The notes beneath the pieces are model-generated. The model did not search any database. It had not been told where the DNA came from and worked only from the letters and a program-made list of their open reading frames with translations. A DNA stretch of 63,861 nucleotides, counting the filler, from Octopus bimaculoides (taxonomy: Eukaryota), in assembly GCF_001194135.2 (NCBI RefSeq). It is 7 parts of 7 records of this genome, joined end to end, with 100 filler letters (N's around TTAATTAATTAA, not from the genome) between each part and the next. Parts side by side here need not be neighbours in the genome. Positions count along the whole stretch, not along the records: positions 49,238 to 63,861 come from NC_068981.1; 6 more parts are not named here. One strand, written 5' to 3'. Shown piece by piece: positions 1 to 63,861 of the stretch. The number at the start of each line of letters is the position of its first letter. Position 1 is the stretch's first letter. The position numbers and the translations under genes were made by a program.

Positions 1-39
1 TATATATACACACACACGCGTGTATGTAAGTAACTCGCA

Positions 40-49237: not shown

Positions 49238-49270
<33 letters not shown>

Positions 49271-49668
49271 ACATATATATGTATGTGTATGTGTGTGTGA
49301 CTGTGTGTGTGTATGCATGTATGTATGTATTTATACGTTCTCATATATGCATATTATATATGTATGAAGACACGTTTTCTTGTGCGTATACTTCCCCGAT
49401 TGACAAATTTATAAGCTAAATAATTTTGTACATATCTGGGACATCGATTCATTCCTCTGAAATAGCAGCCAGGCTCCTTCCTGTCTCAAGTGATACATTA
49501 GAAAATGTAGTTCATGATATATAAATGATGGGAGATATGAGCTTATATCGTTATATGTCAATAATTGTAATATTGTGTTGTTTTAATGTGAACATGAATG
49601 CTATTGCTGGTGAACAAATATTTGTGTTTATTTGAGCATATGTGTATGTGTGCGTGTGTGTGTGTGTA

Positions 49669-49750
<82 letters not shown>

Positions 49751-49955
49751 ATCCCATGCAAAACTTTATCCCAGGAGTATGGGTCTTAGAGAATAATGAA
49801 AATTTAGCAAAGTGATTTACAACCGCCTATTCTTGTAGGTTATATTGAAATAGCTGCAATATAGTTCTGTAAAGTGGAATCAGTATGATGTAGGGAAGAG
49901 ATTGTTTTCCTTTGTTTTCATTATTCATCTTTGCAACAAAGTGAGCCAATCAATA

Positions 49956-50775
49956 TATAGGGGTCCAAAAAGTCGCAATGTTTGATAATTCGTTTATTTT
50001 TTTTTTACCTTTTTCTTTTATTTTCAGGGATTTTATGGACTAGGTCCTGGAAATTAATTATCGAAAAACTTGGCACTGAACCACGTACTCAAGTGGTGAA
50101 ATTGTTCTATCAAAATCAGGGGTCTGTTTCTCAAACCCAGAGAGCACCAAAGAGAAGTGTACAGTACGATTATGGCGGATGAGATAATCTACCCTTATTT
50201 CTTTGAAGGCAATGATGGGAATGCTGTCACTGTAACAGGCGAGCGATACAGGACTATGATCGAGAGCTTTTTGCGCCTTTCCATTCAAAATAGGCCCGAT
50301 ATGTGGTTCCAGCAAGATGGGGCAACTGCTCATACTGCTAGAGAGACAATACAGTTGCTGAGGCAATATTTCGGAGTAAGAATCATATTTTGCTACTGCG
50401 ATGTCTACTGGCTATCACGTTCTCCTGACTTCTTCTTGGGGGGTACCTCATGGAGAAGGTTTATGTCAACAAACCAGAAACCCTGGAGCAATTGAAGGAT
50501 AATATCACAAGAGAAATCAAAGAATCGGACACTGAACCCCTTACATCTATCATGGAACAAATTTTGGAAAGGGCACGGATTTGTGAAGCTGAAAATGGAC
50601 GCCATTTAAACGAGGTCATTTTCCATACGTAATGCAGAGGTATAATGAAAAAGGACTAAAGCAAATTAATTTCTTTTATCTCCTGTATATTAAATTAAAA
50701 TTTCATACACCTATTTGTAAAAATAAGGGACTTAATAATTAAGAACCCTCAGAGACTCTTGGGTCACCCTCTGTA
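49956..50775 (+). mobile_element. Internally deleted Tc1/mariner element
   Basis: EKLGTEPRTQVVKLFYQNQGSVSQTQRA is joined to IIYPYFFEGNDGNAVTVTGERYRTMI...WFQQDGATAHTARET...WLSRSPDFF [frameshift] KVYVNKPETLEQLKDNITREI...NGRHLNEVIF. TIR-like ends are weak, so the boundaries are approximate. Confidence 0.85.
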
Positions 50776-51011
50776 ATACAAGGAAAATATAAATGACGAA
50801 AAAACATAGTGAAAAGGAGCAATGTGAAATAAAGTGTCTCGCTCAAGAACACAACACGCAGCCCGATCTGGGAATCGAACTCACAACCTCACGATCATAA
50901 GCGTCTTCACATCTACACATGCACATATTATCCTCACATACATTGGCCAGGTCACTGATGCTTTTCTTGCCATCCAACTCAACTACTTATTTTCTTCCGG
51001 TCAATTCGACA

Positions 51012-51269
51012 GGTGAAACCGATAATCAAATCACTTTCTTTTCTCTCCATTTATTCCTTTCATCAGCTCCTCAGTCCTGTAGAAGAGGGCAGGGCCGAAG
51101 CGTCAAAGATTTCTTTCATTTCTCTTGGGCGTCAAAGTAATATTCCCTCACTTCCTCTGTCTTGTTTGTTCTTGTATCATTTTGAGCCACACACAGAGGC
51201 ACTCTCTCTTTTTATCTCTCTCCCTCTCCCTCTTAGACTCTCTCCACACACACATATATATATAAGTAT
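51012..51269. repeat. About 258-bp near-identical direct duplicate of 51970-52227
   Basis: Both run ggtgaaaccgataatcaaatcac...cacacatatatatataagtat. Confidence 0.9.
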
Positions 51270-51299
51270 GTATATATATTCTTTTATTCTTTTATTCTT

Positions 51300-51497
51300 T
51301 TATTTGTTTCAGTCATTTGACTGCGGCCATGCTGGAGCACCGCCTTTAGTCGAGCAAATCGACCCCGGGACTTATTCTTTGTAAGCCTAGTACTTATTCT
51401 ATCGGTATCTTTTGCCGAACCGCTAAGTTACGGGGACATAAACACACCAGCATCGGTTGTCAAGCAATGCTAGGGGGACAAACACAGACACACAAAC
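51300..51497 (-). mobile_element. Young SINE family B tail, head presumably in the gap
   Basis: Close reverse-complement match to the B tail at 2991-3146. Confidence 0.85.
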
Positions 51498-54400
51498 ACA
51501 CACACATACATATATANNNNNNNNNNNNNNNNNNNNNNNNNNNNNNNNNNNNNNNNNNNNNNNNNNNNNNNNNNNNNNNNNNNNNNNNNNNNNNNNNNNN
51601 NNNNNNNNNNNNNNNNNNNNNNNNNNNNNNNNNNNNNNNNNNNNNNNNNNNNNNNNNNNNNNNNNNNNNNNNNNNNNNNNNNNNNNNNNNNNNNNNNNNN
51701 NNNNNNNNNNNNNNNNNNNNNNNNNNNNNNNNNNNNNNNNNNNNNNNNNNNNNNNNNNNNNNNNNNNNNNNNNNNNNNNNNNNNNNNNNNNNNNNNNNNN
51801 NNNNNNNNNNNNNNNNNNNNNNNNNNNNNNNNNNNNNNNNNNNNNNNNNNNNNNNNNNNNNNNNNNNNNNNNNNNNNNNNNNNNNNNNNNNNNNNNNNNN
51901 NNNNNNNNNNNNNNNNNNNNNNNNNNNNNNNNNNNNNNNNNNNNNNNNNNNNNNNNNNNNNNNNNNNNNGGTGAAACCGATAATCAAATCACTTTCTTTT
52001 CTCTCCATTTATTCCTTTCATCAGCTCCTCAGTCCTGTAGAAGAGGGCAGGGCCGAAGCGTCAAAGATTTCTTTCATTTCTCTTGGGCGTCAAAGTAATA
52101 TTCCCTCACTTCCTCTGTCTTGTTTGTTCTTGTATCATTTTGAGCCACACACAGAGGCACTCTCTCTTTTTATCTCTCTCCCTCTCCCTCTTAGACTCTC
52201 TCCACACACACATATATATATAAGTATATATCTATGTATACATAGGTATATATCTATATATATAGGTACGTATCTATATCTATCTATATATATATATATA
52301 CATACAGAAAGAGAAATAGTGTACTGTTCTGTTATTTGCAGACTCAACAAAAATCGTGTTTCATCTAGCGAGAAATAAATATCTTTCAATAAACACAGAA
52401 TTTAAATCTAAGCTACATTAAGTATCATGCTCTGACACTGTCCTATCGTAGCTCGTGCGGTTAATGTACTATCGGAGCATGACATTTATAGTAACTTACA
52501 TTTAAATTCCATCACTGCAGTTGCTAGAAATAGTAGCCAAATCACTTGAAATACACACTATATCATATTAAAACGGTTATGGTCACACTGGATAGTGTAT
52601 TAGATAAACTGTGTTTGCAAAACCGATTGGCAACGGCTGGGATTCTTTATGCTCATTGGTCAGCTTTTTCAGGGCTTATCTTTAGTTAGACAATATAAAT
52701 AATTCGTATACTTTTGTATGATACGTATCCGATAGGGATGAACTGCAGACTATATATAATCTTAAATAAAAACAAAATATTTCAAAAGTATTATCCGTGA
52801 AGGACATTTCATTTTCCTTTCAGCTACCACGAGATAATTCCCAGGAAATAGGGTATAAAACACTTTCATGCATGAAGTTATTATTGGTATCGCTGGAGCC
52901 TATTTGCAAACGTGTAATAACATGTATTAGATAATCAATAATTTAGCTGTCTTTAATGTGAATGAACATGTAAGGGATATGGTAATGTGCATGATAATAG
53001 AAAGATCTTCCGCAAGCAGCCCTTTTGAATAAAATATAAAAGAAAAATTACTGCAGATTGCATCCTAGGATCGAGTATTTAGTTACCACTAGAAGGGGAA
53101 AGTAAATGATATATTCACGGACCACCAACTGCTTCTGAAGAAAATAAAGCGCTGCTTCGCATATTCGAAAATTCCTGACACCAAATATCTAAGCGTAAAT
53201 GAATGGCTTCAAAACACGAATTTGAGACATTTAGCAAAATAAGCATTACCTAGAAAGACCAACTTAATAGACATAAAGTAGATTTTTTTCAAAGTGAAAC
53301 TCGATACTGAATGATGAAAAGAACCATTCCATAAAAAAGAAGGCCGTTTCTCTGGATATTGTGATTTATGAACTGGAAAAGAAATTATTTAACTGTAATG
53401 CATCATGTTTCGATACACTTGAGAAATAATACTATACCATCACCAGCAGTTAAACTGAATATATCAACCCTGAATCTGTGGGTACGCTACATAATGGAAA
53501 GGAAACTGCAATATATTTAGTAGCTGTATATTGGTAAAGATTTTGATTTTCTACGTTTGGATGTTCACATGCGCTTCATGTCTATTTAAACAAATTATGG
53601 ATAAAAGAAATTTACATAACAAGAAGATTCAAAACGTGGGACTTGTAGCGCGACAACACGAAAAATGTCTGTAGCCCAGAATGAGAATACTATGTTGGTA
53701 GGAAAAATAGGTCTATTTGTTGCTTAAAAATTATTTCGAAATTTTACACCAACTGTCTCAATGAATTACTCCATTGTATCAAGGAACATCGAGGATGTGA
53801 CGAACAACTTTCAATAGAAAAAAGCTATACCGCCACGTGTATAATATCCAAAGAAACTTAAGTGGCAGTATGGTTTCATGACAAAAAGAAGTTTTGGTTC
53901 ATCTCCCTGGTCGTGTTTGTTTTCAATTTCTGCACTTGGTAAATGTACCCGCTAAACAAGTTCTATAATTTAAAGCTCGCAAAGACCTAGTCAACATTGC
54001 TTTGTTTCTAAAATTTGAACAAATGCTTATGATGTTAAGAGATTCTCGCAGGAAATTTTTTCGAAACAGATCACCTGTGCTTTTGTTTACCTTTTTTTTA
54101 TTTTTGCAACTAAATTTACTATCTTTTCTTTTACAAATGCTTGTGGCTATTTTCCATGGTCTACTATAGTAAGAGATAAAAAATATAAGCCTTATATTTC
54201 TTTGTTGAAAAATCTCAAGAAACACCCACAATGAGGAGAAATAATATGACCTAACACAATATAATAGGTGAATATATAGTTTTTGGCCTTTCAGTATTGA
54301 TGCAAATCAGCGAAACGAATTGTCTACATTCTGCTTCCATATCCCAAAACATTTTCTTCACTGATCTTTTTATCCTCCTTGCTGTAGGCAACGAATACTA

Positions 54401-54687
54401 CAAATAGGTTGCTGACAAACGCATGTTAAAATGATGCTGTGAAGAAAGATAGTTTGAATAAAGAATACTACATAAGAGTTTTAAAATATAGAGCGCTAGG
54501 AGGATACCCCTTACAACAAGGCAATGTTTCCAAGGATACATTTAGTATTGTTCACAACATTTTGGATAGTTGGCTGATAAAAGGTGTAAGTTGTTAACAT
54601 CGACTAGACGTTTTCAAGGAAATCGAGATATAAAGAGATTGTGGCCAAAACAAGAGGTATAGAATCAGTGATAACATTTCTGATGCT

Positions 54688-54907
54688 AAAAGGCGACGAG
54701 CTGGCAGAAACGTTAGCAAAACCGGGCGAAATGCTTAGCGGTATTTCGTTTGCCGCTACGTTCTGAGTTCAAATTCCGCCGAGATCGACTTTGCCTTTCA
54801 TCCTTTCGGGGTCGATAAATTAAGTACCAGTTGCGTACTGGTTTAGATCTAATCGACTGGCCCCCTCCCCCAAACATTTGAGCCCTATGCCTCGAGTAGA
54901 AAAGAAT
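54688..54907 (+). mobile_element. Full SINE family A (tail type 1) with 12-bp TSD
   Basis: The direct repeat atttctgatgct occurs at 54676-54687 and 54908-54919. Confidence 0.9.
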
Positions 54908-55556
54908 ATTTCTGATGCTGAGTACATGCATAGATTTTAACTCCAGAACATACATCAAACATCCCATTATATTTATCACGAAAATCAAACATAATGTGAC
55001 CGATATATTAGCTAAGACACAAGCAAAGGATGAGCACTGTTAAAGTCATTAGCTATCTTGTAGAGGCGAGCAATAACTTTTCAAATCCAGTACAAAGAGA
55101 AAGTTTATGGATAACTGCTACGAAACCTAAACTTTCTATATTCGGATTATGAATTTTTTTAGTCATCTATAATCATTAGCACACTTTCCTATAATACTGT
55201 ATTCTCAACAAGTTGGGATATACACATGGATATATTTATCTATATATACATATATATGTACATATATACATATATTTTGTGTATATATATACATATATAT
55301 ACATGTTTATATATGTATATCTATAGATATATAGATATATACATGTATCTATATATATATATATATATATATATNNNNNNNNNNNNNNNNNNNNNNNNNN
55401 NNNNNNNNNNNNNNNNNNNNNNNNNNNNNNNNNNNNNNNNNNNNNNNNNNNNNNNNNNNNNNNNNNNNNNNNNNNNNNNNNNNNNNNNNNNNNNNNNNNN
55501 NNNNNNNNNNNNNNNNNNNNNNNNNNNNNNNNNNNNNNNNNNNNNNNNNNNNNATA

Positions 55557-56330
55557 ACATTATCATCATCATCGTTTAACGTCCGTTGTCCATGTTGGCA
55601 TGGGTTGGACGGTTTGACTTGTGACTGGCTAGCCAGGATTCTGTACCAGGCCCCAATCTGATCTGGCAAGGCTTCTACAGCTGGATGTCCTTCCTAACGC
55701 CAACAACTCCAAGAGTCTAGTGGGCTCTTTTTACGTGCCTACGGCACGACAGACTCTAAGGCAGCATTGGCATCGGCCACGTTGAGATGGTGCTTTTAAC
55801 GTGCTACTGTTACAGGAGCCAGTCGGGGCGGGGGCGGTGTCTGGCATCGACCACGTTTGGATTGTGCTTTTTACGTGCCCCAGGTACAGGAGCCAGTCTG
55901 GCGGCACTGACATCGACCCACGCATGCATAGTGCTTATTGCGTTCCACTAGCCACCGGTGCCAGTCAGGCGGAACTGACATCGGCCTCAAATACAATTTC
56001 CATTTTGGTTTCGATTTGATTGAGAATATGATAGTGATTTTTATTTTGACTTTATTTGACTGAAGCACGGCCTGTCGCCCGACGATTAAAATCTACTTTT
56101 TAAATGGGCTGGTTATGCGACACTGGTATAGGCTACGAATGTGATCTCACTTTACTTGCCGGTTCTTCTCAATGACAGCATATCTCCAGAGGCCTCGGTC
56201 TCTTGTCATTGCCTCTGTGAGGCCCAACATTCGAGGGTCGTGCCTCACCATCTCATCCCATATCTTTCTGGGCCTTTCTCTTCCCATGGGTTCCTTGCAC
56301 TGTTGGAGAGTGACACATTTTCACACATTC
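55557..56330 (-). mobile_element. 5'-truncated RTE-clade LINE 3' end
   Basis: GRERPRKIWDEMVRHDPRMLGLTEAMTRDRGLWRYAVIEKNRQVK* (stop at 56147-56149) is an RTE-type GRPRK.W...DR..W C-terminus. A 3' UTR follows, ending ggacgttaaacgatgatgatga. Confidence 0.8.
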
Positions 56331-56593
56331 GTTAGCCATTCCGTGCGGCTTCTCGCCGTTAGCGCTACGAAAGCAGAAAAATATCATCGTTATATGCGCG
56401 AAATGGTTATGATCATTTGGACGGTCACTGATGAGGAACTAGCTACGATATTTATGTGAAGTTTCCATTTGTTGTGTTTCTCTTGAATTTTTGGAACATT
56501 GTGTGTGTGTGTGTGTGTGNNNNNNNNNNNNNNNNNNNNNNNNNNNNNNNNNNNNNNNNNNNNNNNNNNNNNNNNNNNNNNNNTGTGCGTTTG

Positions 56594-56629
<36 letters not shown>

Positions 56630-56836
56630 GTCGGTGATTCCTATAAATTACTAACTGCCACTATATCGTTGCAACCACGAGCAACATCAACGTCACTAGG
56701 TCGGTGATTGGCCCCGCTGCCTACTAGCACCATGTCAGTCGCCGTATTTCAATGTCTACAACACGAGCGCTTTCTTCAAGGGCATTTTTCACTGAGAACC
56801 TATCAATAATTCTACAATAAACGTAAAATAACTTAC

Positions 56837-57030
56837 GTAAGTGATCCAGACATTTATTGATAATATTTGGTTTCTTTCGTCTAAATCCAGGATCTGAATT
56901 AAGCTTACTCCGTATTCTACTGTAATTGTTTCATTTGGGTCGTTCACCGGTCTGCCCGTCTTACCTGAGGTTTGGTATTGCTCGATCAAAGTTTTTATAA
57001 GTCGTTTCTCTTGTGACAACACCAACGCGC
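56837..57030 (-). CDS. Internal exon of a nicotinic acetylcholine receptor-like (pentameric Cys-loop ligand-gated ion channel) subunit, N-terminal extracellular domain
   Basis: Reads (G)ALVLSQEKRLIKTLIEQYQTSGKTGRPVNDPNETITVEYGVSLIQILDLDERNQILSINVWITY. It has the nAChR hallmarks EKRL..L...Y, RPV, LIQILDLDE.NQIL..NVW and an N-E-T sequon. Acceptor is ttttgtttctgtatattttggcag|GC (phase 1) and donor is TAC|gtaagt (phase 0). Length 194 nt = 2 nt + 64 codons. Confidence 0.95.
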
Positions 57031-58244
57031 CTGCCAAAATATACAGAAACAAAATATAAATATATTGTTACTTTTATACACACGCTCTAATAGAAACTGA
57101 CAAACACATACACATCTCATAGATGAATTAATGAAAATCTCTATACAAATTCTAAATTTCCTAAAAATAGCTGATAAATCTTGTAAATAACACGAGCACC
57201 ATAAATCATCTTTAAAAAGTGAAATAAAAAATGTCCGTGTTATAGTACTCCTGAATAAAGAGAACAGTCAGGACAGCGGCACCTTTGATCAAAAATCTTG
57301 TTAATTAAGTTGTCACAATGTTAAGCAACAACAAAAACTTAGACGATAGTAATAACAATAACAAAATAATGGTAGGAAAAGCAATTACCAAAATCGTAGC
57401 AACAATAACAAAAACAATGAAGTATTAGAAAAATAAGTAACAAACTGAGGAAATAAGTACCAAGTTCGGTATAATACACTCTAACCCTTGCAGATGATGC
57501 CTTGGTGTACTCGAATTTCAAAGAATGGAACCATTGAAGGAATAAAATTATAATCAGCCTATCATTTGATTGAACAGTGCACTTATCGTAAACAAGAAAC
57601 AAAATTCCCGTTTGAGATTGTTTGTAAACAATTCTATTTTCCTCCGTCAACAAACCAAACAATTCATGACTACGCCCGTTATTTTGATTCACGATTAATT
57701 CAACTACCCATTATTAATATCTCTTCTATATGCCGTAAAAAGAAAATGTTAGATACTTTTTTTAAATTGTGTTTTTACTTGTACTCATTGGACTACGGCT
57801 ATGCTAGGGTACTGTCTTAGATCGTTTTCTCAAAGAAATCAACCCAAGCCCAGTACTTATCGTGCTGCTACTGTATAAGTCTCTCTGAGAGATTTAGAGA
57901 TGCAATATTTCTAATTTTGTAGATCAGTGAATTTATTTCACTTGAAATTCTATAAGTTTTCAAAGGCGAATAAGCATCGACATCTAGCAAGCTAAGCTAC
58001 TCAAGACTGATGAAGAGCAATAAGCCTGAAGCTAGTCTCTTGATGCTGGCTTTCCTGGGTGGAAGTGCTTATCTCCCCTGCTAGAAAACTTAAGGACAAA
58101 GAACGTTTGTGTCAAGTAGCCAACTGGAAACGATGTTTCCTGGTGCTAAATAGCAGTAGCATTCTTCCCTTTCCTGGAAATGCCACATTAAGTTGGCAAC
58201 AAACCATCACTTTATATACATATATATATGTACATATATGTATA

Positions 58245-58280
<36 letters not shown>

Positions 58281-58402
58281 NNNNNNNNNNNNNNNNNNNN
58301 NNNNNNNNNNNNNNNNNNNNNNNNNNNNNNNNNNNNNNNNNNNNNNNNNNNNNNNNNNNNNNNNNNNNNNNNNNNNNNNNNNNNNNNNNNNNNNNNNNNN
58401 NN

Positions 58403-58530
58403 TATATATGTATACGACGGGCTTCCACATAGTTTCCGTCTACAAAATTCGCTCAAAACGAATTGATGGACTCGGTGCTATAGAAGGTATTTGACCAAGA
58501 TGCCGCGTGAGATTGAACCCGAAACCATGT
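58403..58530 (-). mobile_element. SINE family B head, reversed
   Basis: tatacgacgggcttccacatagtttccgtctac...gccgcgtgagattgaacccgaaaccatgtg. Confidence 0.75.
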
Positions 58531-59250
58531 GATTATCCTCATTTATTTTCAGTATTTTTTAAAATCCATGTCGCATTGTAAATTTGAACACTAACTAAAC
58601 TTTTTCTATTTTATGTTTTTGTCTTATACAAATTTATAAATCAATGCAGTAGTAAATTGACCTCGTGGCTTTTACGACTTTCCCCAGTGTTTCAGGAGGA
58701 GCAAACTTAAACGAAACGAATCAAGTAAATCGAGAGTAAGTTGCGGCTGTTGCAGCTTACTGGTTGCTTATTTCCTACTTTCCCAGTATATTTTATACAG
58801 ATATATATTCATGAGGGTAATTGTGGATATTCTGCTTATACGTGTCAAAGTTGTAGTTAAAATTAGGTGGATGTAAATAGAATACAGGATCGATAACTAT
58901 ATAGATAAGTAGGTTGACGTATCGATCGTTTTATAGGTGATGATACAGCGTGCATGTATTAGTGAATAGGTTAATGCGAAGATGGTTGTATGTTTGTGAC
59001 CTGGTGGATGAAGAGTTAAAACAAAACTGGGTGAATGAATCTCACGATGCATGGATATTTTGTGTAGATAATTGCTGGAGAGTATAAATATATTTAAATA
59101 TCGTTGGAAGAATAGATGAATGATCGATAGGCTGTATGACTGTGTCCCTTAGATGAATTGAATGAATAATGCCGTCCTGGTAAATAGGTATTCAGGATTA
59201 AACTATAGTATTTGTTGAAAATCTGGAACGGCCGGTTGTAAATATATAAT

Positions 59251-59462
59251 CCTTTCTACTATAGGCACATGGTCTGAAATTTGTGGGAGGGTGATAGACG
59301 ATTACATTGACCCCAATACTCAACTGCTACTACTCAATATCCAAGAAAGGATGAAAGGCAAAGTTGACGTCGGCAGAATTTGAACTCAGAATGTAAAAAC
59401 GGACGAAATACCGTTATAAATTTCGTCTGGTGTGCTAGCGATTCTGCCAGCTCGCCGCCTTA
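59251..59462 (-). mobile_element. Full SINE family A, reversed
   Basis: Ends gattctgccagctcgccgcctt. A probable 13-bp TSD with one mismatch flanks it (gtaaatatataat 59238-59250 / gtaaataaataat 59466-59478). Confidence 0.85.
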
Positions 59463-60314
59463 GCCGTAAATAAATAATGGAAAGACAACGCGTTTGATGG
59501 GGCGAATTGGCACACTCGCAGAGCGTCGGGCAGAATACTTCGTAGTACCTGTTACAGGCTCGCTACGCGCTGAGTCCAAATCCCGTCGGGTTCAAGTTGA
59601 CATTTTATCCTTAGGCTTTAGATAACAAATTTGCAATTCAAGGCGATGCATTAACAGAGATGTGAAAAAGTTAAAGCATATACTAGAGAATTTGTTCCGG
59701 CTCTGTGTACTGAGATCTGAGTTCGAATCCCGTTATGACTTACTTGCGTGCTAGACTAAAAGCATCGTTCTTAATGCTGGCACTTTGAGTACTTTTAGAG
59801 GAGTTGATTCTGTAACAAGCATTCTGGATTGAGGATACCCTCCTACCATCTTCTTTCTCGCCAGTCTAGAAAGCCCTACAACCGTTCATGAACACTCACT
59901 TCCCTCCTTATTCATATATTAAACACTGCAATTTTATAGAGAACATTTAGGTGTTTTATATTACTAACAGTATATATATATATCAAGGACCTTACAGTTT
60001 TAGTATGCTAAACTAAAATTTCACTTCCATATTAGACCGTTCACTGCACAAATATTGCCAACTCCCGAGAGAATACCACGAAAATCTCATTATATCCGTT
60101 GTTGTTCTTCATAACTATGAACAATGATTGTCGAATAATAATCATGTGTAGACTTGTTTCAGAAACCTATTTGTTACATATAAAATTATAGCCACTTTCA
60201 TTTATGTGAAAATGTGATATATATATATATATGTGATTTTTATTTTCCTTCGAATTAAACACAGAAAAACAAAAGAAGGGATAAATCAACTATGTTATTT
60301 TCTTTTCCTACGAA

Positions 60315-60347
<33 letters not shown>

Positions 60348-60731
60348 TGCGTATATGTGTGTATGGGGTGCGTGAGAGAACATGTGTGTGAGCGTTTATG
60401 TATATACGTATATATATATATATATATATATACGTTTGTTATCTGTCATATTCATGCTGAACTATGTTTTAAAAAATTAACTCAATAAATGAAATTTACA
60501 TTCATACCTTCATAATTATTATACTAATATATACTAAGAAACTATATCGTATAAAATAAAGATAGACATACATTATCTCTAATGGTAATATGAGATAGTG
60601 TGAAACTGAATAAAACAGAAAGGTAGACATTGATGCCCAAAGTTATGATAACATTAGAATTGTCAAAAGCACAGAAAAAAATAATCAGCAACGAACACAA
60701 CGGATCGGCTTCAGCCGCATCTATAGAAGCC

Positions 60732-60807
<76 letters not shown>

Positions 60808-63800
60808 CTTAAGTATATGTGGCTTGCGTGCGAACGTAATTATTCCGAGATGAAATCGCATCCTAGTTCATCGTTTACAATGCTACATTAAACAATAATT
60901 ACAGCTGTAAACTACGTATGTGTGTCGAGGTCACTAAGTTTACAGTATACAAAATATTTGTGTCTTAGATAGACAGAAACATTTCAACATATAAATGTGT
61001 ACAACTGAATTGTCTGTAACTTGGAAGCTTGAGTATTTCATAAAAATGTTCTCAGAGCAATTATATTTCTGTAACGGGAATCATACAGACACACAGACAC
61101 ACAGACACACTCATACATGTATGTAAGCGTGGGCATGTATATATACATATATATATATGCATATATCTTTAAATTTCGGAATTCGGGTTTTAACACCAAT
61201 CTTTGAAATATTACCCTGACATAGTATATCCTATCAGGGAAAGAATCATATTCTATACTGAATTCCATTTTGTAAATATGAGAAAGCTATTTATTTATTT
61301 ATTTATTTATTATTTATTTATGTGTTTCAGCCAAGTGGCTGCGGTCATGCTGGTGCACCACCGTGATTATTTATATATGAGAAAGCTATGTTGCCTATAG
61401 CATATTGCTTGGTTATGCTCTCTTCAACAACCACTGAGGCCTGAAAGAATCGTTTGCTTTCTTGTTACCAAGATAGATTGTAACTTAAATTTGCTTATCC
61501 CACCGCATTTTTTGCATTGCAATTTTGTAGTTTAAAGCTGTTTATTCCATTTTTTACTTTGTAGTTACTTGAACACATGTGGTGATATTGTTATAATCGT
61601 AAAAGTAAAAGTTCTAGATATAAGTATATGTTTTGTACGTTAAATTCTGGTATGCAATTTTCAGTTGTTTTTCGCAATGTGAATAACCTTTCTGTTTGCA
61701 TCAGGTATATTTCTGCCAATGCCAACTAAATTGCTTCATATATGTCTGTTGAGTACTTTCTGATATAGTTCTATAAGATACTCATGTATGTATTATGTTT
61801 GTATGTATGTACGTACATATGTATGTATGTATGTATATATGTATGTCTTGTATCTATGGTCTAGATAAAAGTGCTGTGATTTCTGTAGAATTTCAGTTTA
61901 GAGTTGTTTACTTTTCTATTGTTTTAGATGAAATTTTCACATTAGATAGGCAGCAATGCTTTACTTTTGTCACTGTCTCATATTGTGTAGCGTTTGCATG
62001 GAACTGTTAATTGTATTGGAATGTTCCGCTAATACTCCATATTTTTAAAGATGTGGACATATTTCTGGTGCTGTTTTGCCAGCCTCTGACCATCTTGATT
62101 GTTCTTCGTACAGATTCCACTGCAAATATTTCTGGCAAAATGCCATATTCTCTGAGAAAGTAATACTTAACGAATATTTTCAGACCATTGTCGATAATTT
62201 TGTTGATACCTTCCATATCGCTATGCCACGATTGCTATTTTTTTTATCACAGCGGGCTGTTATGAAGCATCACGATCTCTTTTATTAAAACATAATTCAG
62301 TAGCTCTTTCGTGTTTCTGATTAACAAAGGAGTAGGGAGTGACGTACGAGAGACGCTGCTCTTCCTATCAACATCGTAGATATCCTCAAGCTGGCAGGAT
62401 ATGGACCTATGAATAACATTTTGCTTCTAAATATGATGAGTGGTTCACCTAATTTCCACTTTTTTAAGTTGGACAAACCTCCCAACACTAAGCATATCAT
62501 GTCAAAATGTTAATGTTTTCACTGCTGAGTTATAATGTAAAATACTCGTGTCTTTCATGTCATTCAAGTGTTGCTCGAGTATTACACTATAGCACGCAAA
62601 GGCCATTTTGGCCGACCTTATGCGTTAGCCAACATCCCACCCACTTACGTATATTCTGTCAGTGTCTGCACGATTCTGTGTCTATTTTGCATATAGATGC
62701 ATTTAAATATGATTTTTGTAATGGTGTGCATATCAGAATGTATGGATGGCTATACACATGCGCGTATATTTGCATACATTTGTTATTTTCCTGAGTGGAA
62801 ATTAAAAATTTCTTTTGAATAGCCACCATCCAGATATCAAAGTTTTAACAAATACCTATTTTAAAAAGGTTCTTTTATTCATCCATTAGGTAACTAACCG
62901 CTTTTAAGTTTTCGGGATATCTGGCAGATGTGTAGTATACTAAATATGATATTCCTTTCTCGTGTAAAAATAATAAGTTCCTTTTACAAGCATTCAAAGT
63001 CAGCTACAGGGTTTACAGTTAAAGTTGCATTTTGGGATGCCGAGTTGCAAATTGTTGCCTACGGACATTCTATGTGTTCTCTATTTATTTTGCCACATTA
63101 GAGGCTAGTGGACTGCCGACTTCCACAACAGAAGAAATTTAATTTTTATATTCTAAATTAGAAGATCAGATTGGTTATTTCAATTAGGTTATTGTCTTTG
63201 TTCCGAGGTCCCACCTGATTTATGCATCTAAATGCGTTCATCCTTATTGTTCTCACTTTTCTGTTCTATTCTAATGCAATTTTCTCTGGCTACAGTATCA
63301 TCCCTGTTTTCAGAGGACATCCTCACACAGTTGGCAATAGTGTAGCAAGCTGCTCTGTTCATCTGTTTTAGTTTTGTAGAACCTAATTTTTTTTAACCTC
63401 ATCTTGTTTCGCATATTGTGTAGGCATGATTGATTGGGGAATTTCTTACTGGAAGAAACCTTTAATATGAGACGTTACAACCTATTCATTACTTCATGTC
63501 AGGCTTGGATTGAGATTTATTCACTCTATGGTTAGTGTTTTGTCTGTACGTTTGCGTCTACTTGTACGTATTCGCGTCTAGTGCCTCTTTTATTGTCCTA
63601 TAACAAATGTGTTTTGCAAATCGGAATGAATAGGATATAAAGAAGTGAACTGCTAATCGCTACAAACGATGCAGGAAGAGAAAAAAAAAAAACAAGCAGA
63701 AAGGTTAAACAGACTATTCAAATTTTTTCCAATGCCTCTTCCTCAAAAATTCATTCTAAGAGTACTTGTAGTCGTTAATATTGTACCAGATTTTGTTTTG

Positions 63801-63861
63801 ATTTCCGTTATCTTTTTTTTTTTTTCGTTTTCTTCCCCTTTTTATTTAAAAAATTTCTATT

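What the first reader, a model, noticed from the sequence alone, without database searches (positions are those of the whole stretch)
56837..57030. nAChR-like exon equal to alpha7 exons 2+3 fused, plus a 3-residue insertion
Seen: a 194-nt exon with a phase-1 acceptor and phase-0 donor. Known: human CHRNA7 coding exons 1-3 are 55, 140 and 45 nt, so its intron 1 is phase 1 ten residues before the L of 'QRKL', and intron 3 follows NIWLQM. Here the split G is also ten residues before the L of 'EKRL', and the donor follows NVWITY. 140+45+9 = 194, matching three extra residues (YQTSGKTGRPV vs YNPLERPV). So alpha7 intron 2 is absent and the loop-D Trp is kept. Inference: the EKRLIK..Y..G..GRPV / LIQILDLDE pattern resembles the molluscan nAChR-like group that includes anion-selective subunits. 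It is probably not a cephalopod chemotactile receptor, as those are reported to be largely intronless.
Basis: partly seen in the sequence, partly recalled or inferred. Interest (0 to 1): 0.7.

Follow-up and report, generated by a model that had tools for sequence, protein, structure and literature searches.

The report
Octopus chloride-type nicotinic receptor exon

Summary
The exon is real. It lies on the minus strand (57030 to 56837) and is 194 nt. It has a phase-1 acceptor (ttttggcag|GC) and a phase-0 donor (TAC|gtaagt). Its 64 codons are 100% identical to residues 15-78 of RefSeq XP_052825757.1, "neuronal acetylcholine receptor subunit alpha-10 isoform X3" of Octopus bimaculoides.

Spliced transcripts of related cephalopods read straight across the downstream junction. 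No other exon of the gene lies in the 14.6-kb piece.

The annotated full-length protein has:
- the Cys-loop;
- the loop-C vicinal cysteines;
- every aromatic ACh-binding residue;
- a Pro-Ala (PESPAK) M1-M2 linker in place of the cation-type GEK.

In a 124-sequence tree it falls with Lymnaea subunit B in a molluscan orthogroup (200/200 bootstraps). It is separate from Lymnaea K and from two octopus paralogues. Lymnaea B is reported to conduct anions.

The exon has exactly 194 nt and the same boundaries in two other genomic loci. In 103 of 113 genomic fragments from relatives, the residue after the exon end is Val, as expected when a GT donor is read through. The absent alpha7 intron 2 and the three extra residues are therefore features of the clade.

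Chloride selectivity in octopus is inferred, not measured. Novelty is low.

The parts
56837..57030 (-). Coding exon, 194 nt, phase 1 in and phase 0 out. It encodes the N-terminal helix, the beta1 strand and the start of beta2 (loop D) of the ligand-binding domain: (G)ALVLSQEKRL...NVWITY.
   Evidence: Searches give the sequence and frame. Pfam PF02931, E=4.2e-9; 100% identity to residues 15-78 of XP_052825757.1; cephalopod transcripts P0169 and P0170 read ...NVWITY|QWKDIYLKW without a break.
57031..57060 (-). 3' splice site of the upstream intron: a pyrimidine/AT-rich tract ending in ...ttttggcag.
   Evidence: The same phase-1 position, ten codons before the L of EK(R/Q)L, is found in L001 (ttttag|GC) and L002 (tttcag|GG). 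RefSeq isoforms X1, X2 and X3 join three different first exons at this point.
56831..56836 (-). 5' splice site of the downstream intron, gtaagt, directly after the TAC (Tyr) codon.
   Evidence: The position is conserved in L001 (TAC|gtaagt) and L002 (TAT|gtacgt). In 103 of 113 genomic fragments of relatives, Val follows the exon end.
56846..56848 (-). Codon of the loop-D tryptophan (alpha7 W55 equivalent), part of the complementary face of the ACh site.
   Evidence: alignment with human alpha7 and Lymnaea B.
56954..56974 (-). QTSGKTG segment that holds the three residues extra relative to alpha7 (YQTSGKTGRPV versus YNPLERPV).
   Evidence: One search shows the 3-residue gap in the HMMER alignment. 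The length is the same in all 12 aligned sequences (11 full-length clade members plus the fragment P0006).
56876..56887 (-). DLDE codons. The site equivalent to vertebrate intron 2 (alpha7 MDV|DEK) falls between 56882 and 56881 and is uninterrupted here.
   Evidence: It is uninterrupted in all relatives examined.
49238..56830 (-). Partial downstream intron, at least 7.6 kb. It contains three N gaps, microsatellites and repeat remnants, and no further exon of the gene.
57061..63861 (-). Partial upstream intron, at least 6.8 kb. None of the three annotated alternative first exons lies here.

Best explanation
The feature is coding exon 2 of the Octopus bimaculoides gene whose RefSeq products are XP_052825748/753/757 (automatically named 'alpha-10'). 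This gene is the cephalopod orthologue of Lymnaea stagnalis nAChR subunit type B.

What the exon encodes: the first 64 residues of the mature extracellular domain. These comprise the N-terminal helix, a three-residue-longer helix-to-beta1 linker typical of the clade, beta1, and the loop-D tryptophan.

How it is spliced: a signal-peptide exon is joined to its 5' end, and RefSeq predicts three alternatives. The WxD...LxW exon is joined to its 3' end. Both introns exceed the piece.

Predicted function: the complete protein is an alpha-type Cys-loop subunit with an intact ACh-binding aromatic box. At the cytoplasmic mouth of M2 it has Pro-Ala where cation channels have Gly-Glu. It therefore most likely assembles, possibly as a homopentamer like Lymnaea B, into an acetylcholine-gated chloride channel that mediates fast inhibitory cholinergic signalling.

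Shown here: the exon, its splice sites, its identity with the annotated protein, its orthology, the motif, and the conserved exon structure.

Inferred: anion selectivity, ACh gating, stoichiometry and physiological role in octopus.
For: - Exon and splice sites.
- Domain match.
- 100% identity to XP_052825757.1, with orthologues in O. sinensis, O. vulgaris and Argonauta.
- Contiguous cephalopod mRNAs (about 1.95-kb Logan contigs encoding 517-518 aa) that cross both junctions.
- PESPAK linker, YYPCCSEPY loop C, Cys-loop, and the aromatic residues of loops A, B, C and D.
- Of the full-length sequences scanned, which include the best hits, all in which the M1-M2 linker pattern was found (most of them) carry a Pro at the position of alpha7's Gly. 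Nearly all read PAK or PAR; three read PSK or AAK. They come from molluscs, annelids, a nemertean, a brachiopod, a bryozoan, flatworms and rotifers.
- Lymnaea B (ABA60381.1) is 56% identical over 97% of the length; Lymnaea K is 43% identical.
- Tree and bootstraps: molluscan B orthogroup 200/200, and this gene plus Lymnaea B excluding Lymnaea K and the octopus paralogues 200/200.
- Literature: LnAChR B is the anion-conducting type (PMC4193815). The Pro-Ala motif is a defining feature of anion nAChRs, and replacing the M2 Glu by Pro-Ala in a vertebrate nAChR switches selectivity (PMC4055736).
- Conserved 194-nt exon and donor position.
Against: - Only one exon of the gene is in the window. The pore, loop C and all other features come from a computational RefSeq model. 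That model is corroborated by transcript contigs of related cephalopods, not by reads from this species checked here.
- No electrophysiology exists for any cephalopod member that I could find.
- The tree is neighbour-joining with one vertebrate outgroup written from memory and no molluscan cation-type subunits. It tests orthology within the PA clade well, but not the position of the clade within all nAChRs.
- The sister relation of cephalopods to gastropod B is weak (110/200).
- The 9' pore position is Val rather than Leu (my reading of the alignment). The consequence is unknown.
Confidence: 0.85

Rival explanations
1. It is an exon of a conventional cation-selective, excitatory alpha subunit, as the RefSeq name 'alpha-10' (or alpha-9, beta-3 or alpha-5 in the orthologues) would suggest.
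For: The exon alone matches vertebrate alpha7 and alpha4 best in the PDB, and the full protein matches alpha4, alpha3 and alpha7. Source names are all cation-type vertebrate names.
Against: - These names are automatic best-vertebrate-hit labels and differ between orthologues (alpha-10, beta-3, alpha-5, acr-16).
- The intermediate-ring Glu is replaced by Ala with a preceding Pro.
- The protein is orthologous to the anion-conducting Lymnaea B.
- No vertebrate protein appears among the 120 best hits.
Confidence: 0.08
2. It belongs to the cephalopod chemotactile receptors (CRs), nAChR-derived contact chemoreceptors of the suckers.
For: The organism is an octopus and CRs are nAChR-like. I made no direct alignment to a CR.
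Against: - CRs are described as intronless retrogene-like genes (PMC13174522, citing van Giesen 2020). This exon has canonical introns on both sides.
- The gene has orthologues throughout molluscs.
- ACh-binding residues are intact, whereas CRs have a remodelled hydrophobic pocket.
- No chemotactile receptor chain is among the best 60 PDB matches, whereas 60 vertebrate and annelid nAChR chains are.
Confidence: 0.01
3. It is a pseudo-exon or an exon of a decaying duplicate that does not contribute to a functional protein.
For: - Only one exon is visible in the piece.
- RefSeq isoforms X4-X6 omit it.
- The exon contains an internal donor-like CAG|GTAAGA.
- In a related cephalopod, some transcripts carry a 184-nt insert with a stop right after the orthologous exon.
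Against: - The frame is open with perfect splice signals.
- The amino-acid sequence is 100% identical in the O. bimaculoides, O. sinensis/O. vulgaris and Argonauta hians models. It is 83-87% conserved in transcripts of more distant cephalopods, which join it correctly.
- The internal GTAAGA lies in codons kept in those mRNAs.
Confidence: 0.02

Closest known systems
Lymnaea stagnalis nAChR subunit type B (LnAChR B; ABA60381.1 / Q2XWL1; van Nierop et al. 2005)
   Same: - Same orthogroup (200/200 bootstraps).
- 56% identity over 97% of the length.
- Identical FWLPPESPAKMQLGMNI linker and start of M2.
- YYxCCxEPY loop C.
- The same three-residue-longer helix-beta1 linker (Y..xGKxGRPV).
   Different: - It is a cephalopod gene, with long introns around this exon (more than 6.8 and 7.6 kb).
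- Three predicted alternative signal-peptide exons.
- A divergent intracellular loop.
- No functional data. Anion conductance is reported for the snail subunit only.
Lymnaea subunit K and the third molluscan Pro-Ala subfamily (octopus paralogues XP_014772298 and XP_014776336)
   Same: PESPAK motif, alpha-type loop C and overall architecture. They belong to the same spiralian Pro-Ala clade.
   Different: They are separate subfamilies in the tree, with 43-49% identity. The window's gene is not their orthologue.
Schistosoma mansoni SmACC-1/-2 acetylcholine-gated chloride channels (MacDonald et al. 2014, PMC4055736)
   Same: They are nAChR-derived and carry the Pro-Ala motif. Flatworm homologues (Paragonimus, Dicrocoelium, Calicophoron, Mesocestoides, Macrostomum) appear among the hits and fall inside the same large clade.
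   Different: They are flatworm paralogues with long inserts, not orthologues. SmACC itself was not retrieved or aligned here.
Human CHRNA7 (alpha7)
   Same: - Best solved-structure relatives by sequence (with alpha4).
- Intron 1 (phase 1) and intron 3 (phase 0) occupy the same positions.
- Aromatic-box residues are conserved.
- In the relative L002, alpha7 introns 4, 7 and 8 are also shared, including an identical 87-nt M2 exon.
   Different: - Intron 2 is absent, so the 140- and 45-nt exons form one exon.
- Three extra residues.
- Gly-Glu is replaced by Pro-Ala at -2'/-1'.
- The predicted selectivity is opposite.
Octopus and squid chemotactile receptors (CRT1, CRB1)
   Same: Same species group and the same nAChR superfamily fold.
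   Different: CRs are reported to be intronless, cephalopod-enriched, altered in the ACh pocket, and cation-permeable sensors. This gene is intron-bearing, pan-molluscan and retains the ACh pocket.
C. elegans ACC-1..4 acetylcholine-gated chloride channels
   Same: Same predicted function (ACh-gated Cl- channel).
   Different: They belong to the GABA/glycine-like branch, not the nAChR branch (PMC4055736). They are convergent, not homologous in the narrow sense.

Membership tests
Cys-loop (pentameric) ligand-gated ion channels, nAChR branch | N-terminal Neur_chan_LBD domain followed by a four-helix Neur_chan_memb domain, with a 13-residue-spaced Cys-loop. | tested here: met
   The exon alone matches PF02931 positions 1-54, E=4.2e-9. 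The annotated full protein matches PF02931 at E=6e-67 and PF02932 at E=6e-34. Cys148 and Cys162 align with the alpha7 Cys-loop. The best PDB matches are all nAChR subunits.
alpha-type nAChR subunits | Vicinal cysteines in loop C (YxCC). | tested here: met
   KYYPCCSEPYPD in XP_052825757.1. This lies in an exon outside the window.
ACh-gated receptors (functional agonist site) | Aromatic box: loop A Tyr, loop B Trp, loop C Tyr and Tyr, loop D Trp. | tested here: met
   All five are conserved in the alignment with alpha7 and Lymnaea B. The loop-D Trp is in this exon (56848-56846). Actual gating by ACh is not testable with these tools.
Spiralian anion-selective nAChRs (Lymnaea B/K type, SmACC) | Pro-Ala in the M1-M2 linker in place of the intermediate-ring Glu. 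| tested here: met
   The linker is WLPPESPAKMQLG, versus alpha7 LLPADSGEKISLG. The motif is described as defining in PMC4055736.
Spiralian anion-selective nAChRs (Lymnaea B/K type, SmACC) | Phylogenetic placement inside the clade, with a characterised anion-conducting member as orthologue. | tested here: met
   NJ tree of 124 sequences with 200 bootstraps. The molluscan B orthogroup is recovered 200/200. This gene plus Lymnaea B, excluding Lymnaea K and the octopus paralogues, is recovered 200/200.
Spiralian anion-selective nAChRs (Lymnaea B/K type, SmACC) | Measured chloride selectivity of the ACh-evoked current. | not testable with these tools
   This needs heterologous expression and reversal-potential measurements. 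No cephalopod data were found in the library.
Cephalopod chemotactile receptors | Intronless (retrogene-like) coding sequence. | tested here: not met
   Canonical acceptor and donor flank this exon. Neighbouring exons are more than 6.8 and 7.6 kb away. The intronless character of CRs is taken from PMC13174522.
Cephalopod chemotactile receptors | Membership of the cephalopod-enriched CR clade, with a remodelled hydrophobic ligand pocket. | tested here: not met
   The orthogroup spans gastropods and bivalves and the ACh aromatic box is intact. No CR sequence was available for direct alignment, so this is an indirect test.
Vertebrate alpha9/alpha10 subunits (the RefSeq name) | Orthology to CHRNA9/CHRNA10. 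| tested here: not met
   No vertebrate protein is among the 120 best hits. Names differ among the orthologues: alpha-10, beta-3, alpha-5, acr-16. Among solved structures, alpha4, alpha3 and alpha7 score above alpha9, although the alpha9 chain is an ectodomain only, which limits that comparison.

The most novel reading that the evidence does not exclude
Octopus, and cephalopods generally, may keep a set of three nAChR-derived chloride-channel subunits (B-type, K-type and a third type). The B-type gene seen here would form ACh-gated Cl- channels, giving cephalopod brains a fast inhibitory cholinergic pathway that has not been characterised at the molecular level. Three alternative signal-peptide first exons spliced onto this exon would provide promoter- or tissue-specific control. 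In that case, transcriptomic studies that treat these 'chrna10-like' genes as excitatory cation channels would be misreading them.
Probability: 0.55. Interest if true: 0.35.

Novelty: already known. Interest (0 to 1): 0.22.

Why it matters
There are three small points of value.

1. Naming. The automatic names of this gene and its orthologues (alpha-10, beta-3, alpha-5, acr-16) hide that it is the orthologue of a chloride-conducting receptor. [quoted passage not shown] Whether that squid gene belongs to this clade was not checked.

2. A cheap genomic marker. In the members examined, the clade has a 194-nt exon that lacks the otherwise pan-vertebrate intron 2 and carries three extra residues. 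This can flag Pro-Ala-type subunits from the first LBD exon alone in fragmented assemblies.

3. Experimental access. It points to a clonable candidate for inhibitory cholinergic transmission in cephalopods.

None of this changes current understanding of the family.

Tried and rejected
- Other exons: tblastn of human alpha7 and of the full octopus isoforms against the piece found only this one. Six-mer searches for the three annotated first exons, the old-annotation first exon and the next exon found nothing.
- Word-indexed protein search with the 65-aa peptide returned only four genomic fragments. The exhaustive representative search was needed to find the annotated protein.
- The look-up of encoding contigs for the RefSeq protein: not on record. 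The octopus gene's full exon map could therefore not be read. The gene structure was read instead from a relative with short introns (L002).
- van Nierop et al. 2005 (PMC6725845) is not held. Its conclusions are cited through PMC4193815 and PMC4055736.
- No held paper stating the CHRNA7 exon sizes was found.
- I first suspected that fragment P0006 showed a mutated donor or a retained intron, because its tail (TSAFTFF) resembles the window's read-through (VSYFTFI). The DNA shows it is an unrelated 184-nt insert in a transcript, with no counterpart in the piece.
- Rfam: no RNA family in the piece.
- Pfam gave no hit for the transposase-like ORF at 50157-50495, even at E<=10.
- Structure prediction was not run. 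It would not discriminate between the explanations.

Full report
OBSERVATION. The coordinates 56837-57030 hold an exon, but on the minus strand. Read from 57030 down to 56837, the sequence is preceded by a 30-nt pyrimidine/AT-rich tract ending ttttggcag and followed by gtaagt. It is 194 nt long. Only one frame is open. That frame starts with two bases that complete a split codon (phase 1) and ends on a complete TAC codon (phase 0). The peptide is (G)ALVLSQEKRLIKTLIEQYQTSGKTGRPVNDPNETITVEYGVSLIQILDLDERNQILSINVWITY.

It matches the first 54 positions of Pfam Neur_chan_LBD with E=4.2e-9. In the PDB it matches human alpha7 and alpha4 best, at E~5e-8. The site where alpha7 has intron 2 (MDV|DEKNQ) is uninterrupted here (LDL|DERNQ). 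The loop-D tryptophan codon is present.

I could not find the human exon sizes (55/140/45) in a held paper. They agree with my recollection and with the arithmetic on the alpha7 sequence. Pedersen et al. 2019 state that introns 1-3 are common to all vertebrate nAChR genes.

WHOSE EXON IT IS. The word-indexed search found only four genomic ORF fragments. The exhaustive search of 1.84 billion representatives found a 512-aa protein that is 100% identical over residues 15-78. The cluster look-up names it XP_052825757.1, [quoted passage not shown].
- The cluster holds five further isoforms and orthologues in O. sinensis, O. vulgaris and Argonauta hians.
- It also holds fragments from the 2015 annotation in which the gene was split after ...PAKMQLG.
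- The window is therefore O. bimaculoides DNA, and the N gaps suggest an older, gapped assembly of that genome.
- Isoforms X1, X2 and X3 differ only in the signal-peptide exon spliced onto this exon at G|ALVLSQ. X4-X6 lack the exon.
- Two Logan contigs of about 1.95 kb encode 517-518-aa proteins that are 82-83% identical. At that size they must be mRNAs of other cephalopods. They read ...NVWITY|QWKDIYLKW... without a break, so the downstream junction is used.
- None of the neighbouring exons is in the piece. The flanking introns are therefore longer than 6.8 kb upstream and 7.6 kb downstream.

WHAT KIND OF SUBUNIT. The full protein has both Pfam domains. Aligned with alpha7 and Lymnaea B, it shows:
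- the Cys-loop cysteines;
- loop C YYPCCSEPY, with the vicinal cysteines;
- the loop A Tyr, loop B Trp, both loop C Tyr residues and the loop D Trp.

Where alpha7 reads LLPADSGEKISLG, this protein reads WLPPESPAKMQLG. That is Pro-Ala in place of Gly-Glu at the cytoplasmic mouth of M2.

A search with the full protein returned 420 hits below 1e-40. Among the full-length sequences held from this and the earlier searches, every one in which the linker pattern could be located has Pro at the first of these two positions. Nearly all read PAK or PAR; two rotifer-group sequences read PSK and one unnamed sequence reads AAK. A minority had no recognisable linker. They come from molluscs, annelids, a nemertean, a brachiopod, a bryozoan, flatworms, rotifers and an orthonectid.

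Cluster look-up identifies hit P0185/P0286 as Lymnaea stagnalis nAChR subunit type B (56% identity over 97%). It identifies P0266 as subunit type K (43%).

A neighbour-joining tree was built from 124 sequences and 449 columns, with human alpha7 as outgroup. It shows three molluscan Pro-Ala subfamilies, each with one octopus gene. With 200 bootstraps:
- the cephalopod group is recovered 200/200;
- the molluscan B orthogroup (cephalopods, gastropod B and bivalves) is recovered 200/200;
- this gene plus Lymnaea B, to the exclusion of Lymnaea K and both octopus paralogues, is recovered 200/200;
- the sister relation to gastropod B alone is weak, at 110/200.

In the literature, Lymnaea subunits are divided into cation-conducting (A) and anion-conducting (B) types (PMC4193815, citing van Nierop 2005). 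The Pro-Ala motif is called a defining feature of nicotinic chloride channels. [quoted passage not shown]

EXON STRUCTURE IN THE CLADE. Two unrelated genomic loci of relatives carry an exon of exactly 194 nt. L001 comes from a 4.7-Mb ENA contig and L002 from a 5.2-kb Logan contig. In both, a phase-1 acceptor sits ten codons before the L of EK(R/Q)L and a phase-0 GT donor follows W..Y.

Among 113 short ORF fragments of relatives that contain the D-x-D-E...W..Y end, 103 continue with Val. This is expected when a phase-0 GT donor is read through. Five others continue directly into the next exon, which marks them as transcripts. All of them cross the alpha7 intron-2 site without interruption.

L002 has short introns and gives a wider view. 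Its exons are 194/116/455/87 nt. In alpha7 terms these are (140+45+9)/(110+6)/(80+168+195+12)/87. In that relative, alpha7 introns 1, 3, 4, 7 and 8 are kept and introns 2, 5 and 6 are absent. The octopus 2015 fragments break after KMQLG, which is consistent with the same intron-7 position.

HOW IT MOST LIKELY WORKS. The exon supplies the N-terminal helix, beta1 and the loop-D face of the agonist site. With the remaining exons it makes an alpha-type subunit able to bind ACh. Its pore entrance lacks the intermediate ring of negative charge and carries the Pro-Ala signature. The most likely product is an ACh-gated chloride channel, by analogy with its snail orthologue, that hyperpolarises or shunts the postsynaptic cell.
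- Shown: exon, splice signals, identity, orthology, motifs.
- Inferred: selectivity, agonist, stoichiometry, tissue.

RIVALS.
- A conventional cation-selective subunit is suggested only by automatic names. These differ between orthologues, and the motif and orthology contradict them.
- A chemotactile receptor is contradicted by the introns, the pan-molluscan orthogroup, the intact ACh pocket and the PDB ranking. I could not align a CR directly.
- A pseudo-exon is contradicted by perfect conservation across octopod species models and by correct splicing in related transcripts.

NOVELTY AND VERDICT. The sequence is already in RefSeq and the clade has been known since 2005. New here are only the explicit orthology call (octopus gene = LnAChR B type), the note that the RefSeq name is misleading, and the clade-wide 194-nt exon signature. 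Interest is low.

Noticed in passing
window 56959-56967 (minus strand, inside the exon): There is a near-consensus donor-like site, CAG|GTAAGA, inside the exon, in the codons TCA GGT AAG of the three-residue-longer segment. Related cephalopod mRNAs keep these codons, so it is apparently not used.
   Followed up: partly
L003 361-544 and L004 (Logan SRR8281665 and SRR8281695): Transcripts of a related cephalopod carry a 184-nt insert with an in-frame stop. It lies exactly between the orthologue of this exon and the next exon, relative to the canonical mRNA L005. It may be a poison cassette exon. No counterpart was found in the window's intron sequence by blastn or tblastx.
   Followed up: partly
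RefSeq isoforms of the gene (P0155, P0157, P0005); not in the window: Three different predicted signal-peptide first exons are spliced to the same acceptor of this exon: MKRDYMDQMLLLALLVLFWQYGAQ, METSIKLPNFYVILFILLSTL and MVRTLIWLPFLLQ. Isoforms X4-X6 start downstream and lack the exon.
   Followed up: no
window 50157-50495 (+): A 112-codon ORF contains ...MWFQQDGATAHTA..., which from memory resembles the catalytic region of mariner/Tc1-type transposases. Pfam gave no hit even at E<=10, so this remains an unconfirmed impression of a decayed transposon remnant.
   Followed up: partly
window 51012-51277 and 51970-52235: A 266-nt direct duplicate (99% identical) lies on the two sides of the 453-N gap at 51517-51969. 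It is either a tandem duplication or an assembly artefact at a scaffold join.
   Followed up: partly
window 55738-56237, including 55841-55983: This is a local G+C-rich island (50% against about 33% elsewhere). It contains 2.1 copies of a 68-nt tandem unit and lies between two N gaps. Its nature is unknown, possibly a repeat element.
   Followed up: no
window 49238-49284, 49641-49750, 55230-55374, 56584-56629, 58213-58280, 60738-60807: There are many (TA)n and (TG)n microsatellites. Several directly abut the N gaps, which suggests the assembly broke at simple repeats.
   Followed up: no
L002 2040-4976: A relative with short introns (unknown organism, Logan SRR26493809) shows the exon pattern 194/116/455/87 nt. 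Alpha7 introns 2, 5 and 6 are absent, introns 1, 3, 4, 7 and 8 are kept, and the M2 exon is the same 87 nt as in human alpha7.
   Followed up: yes
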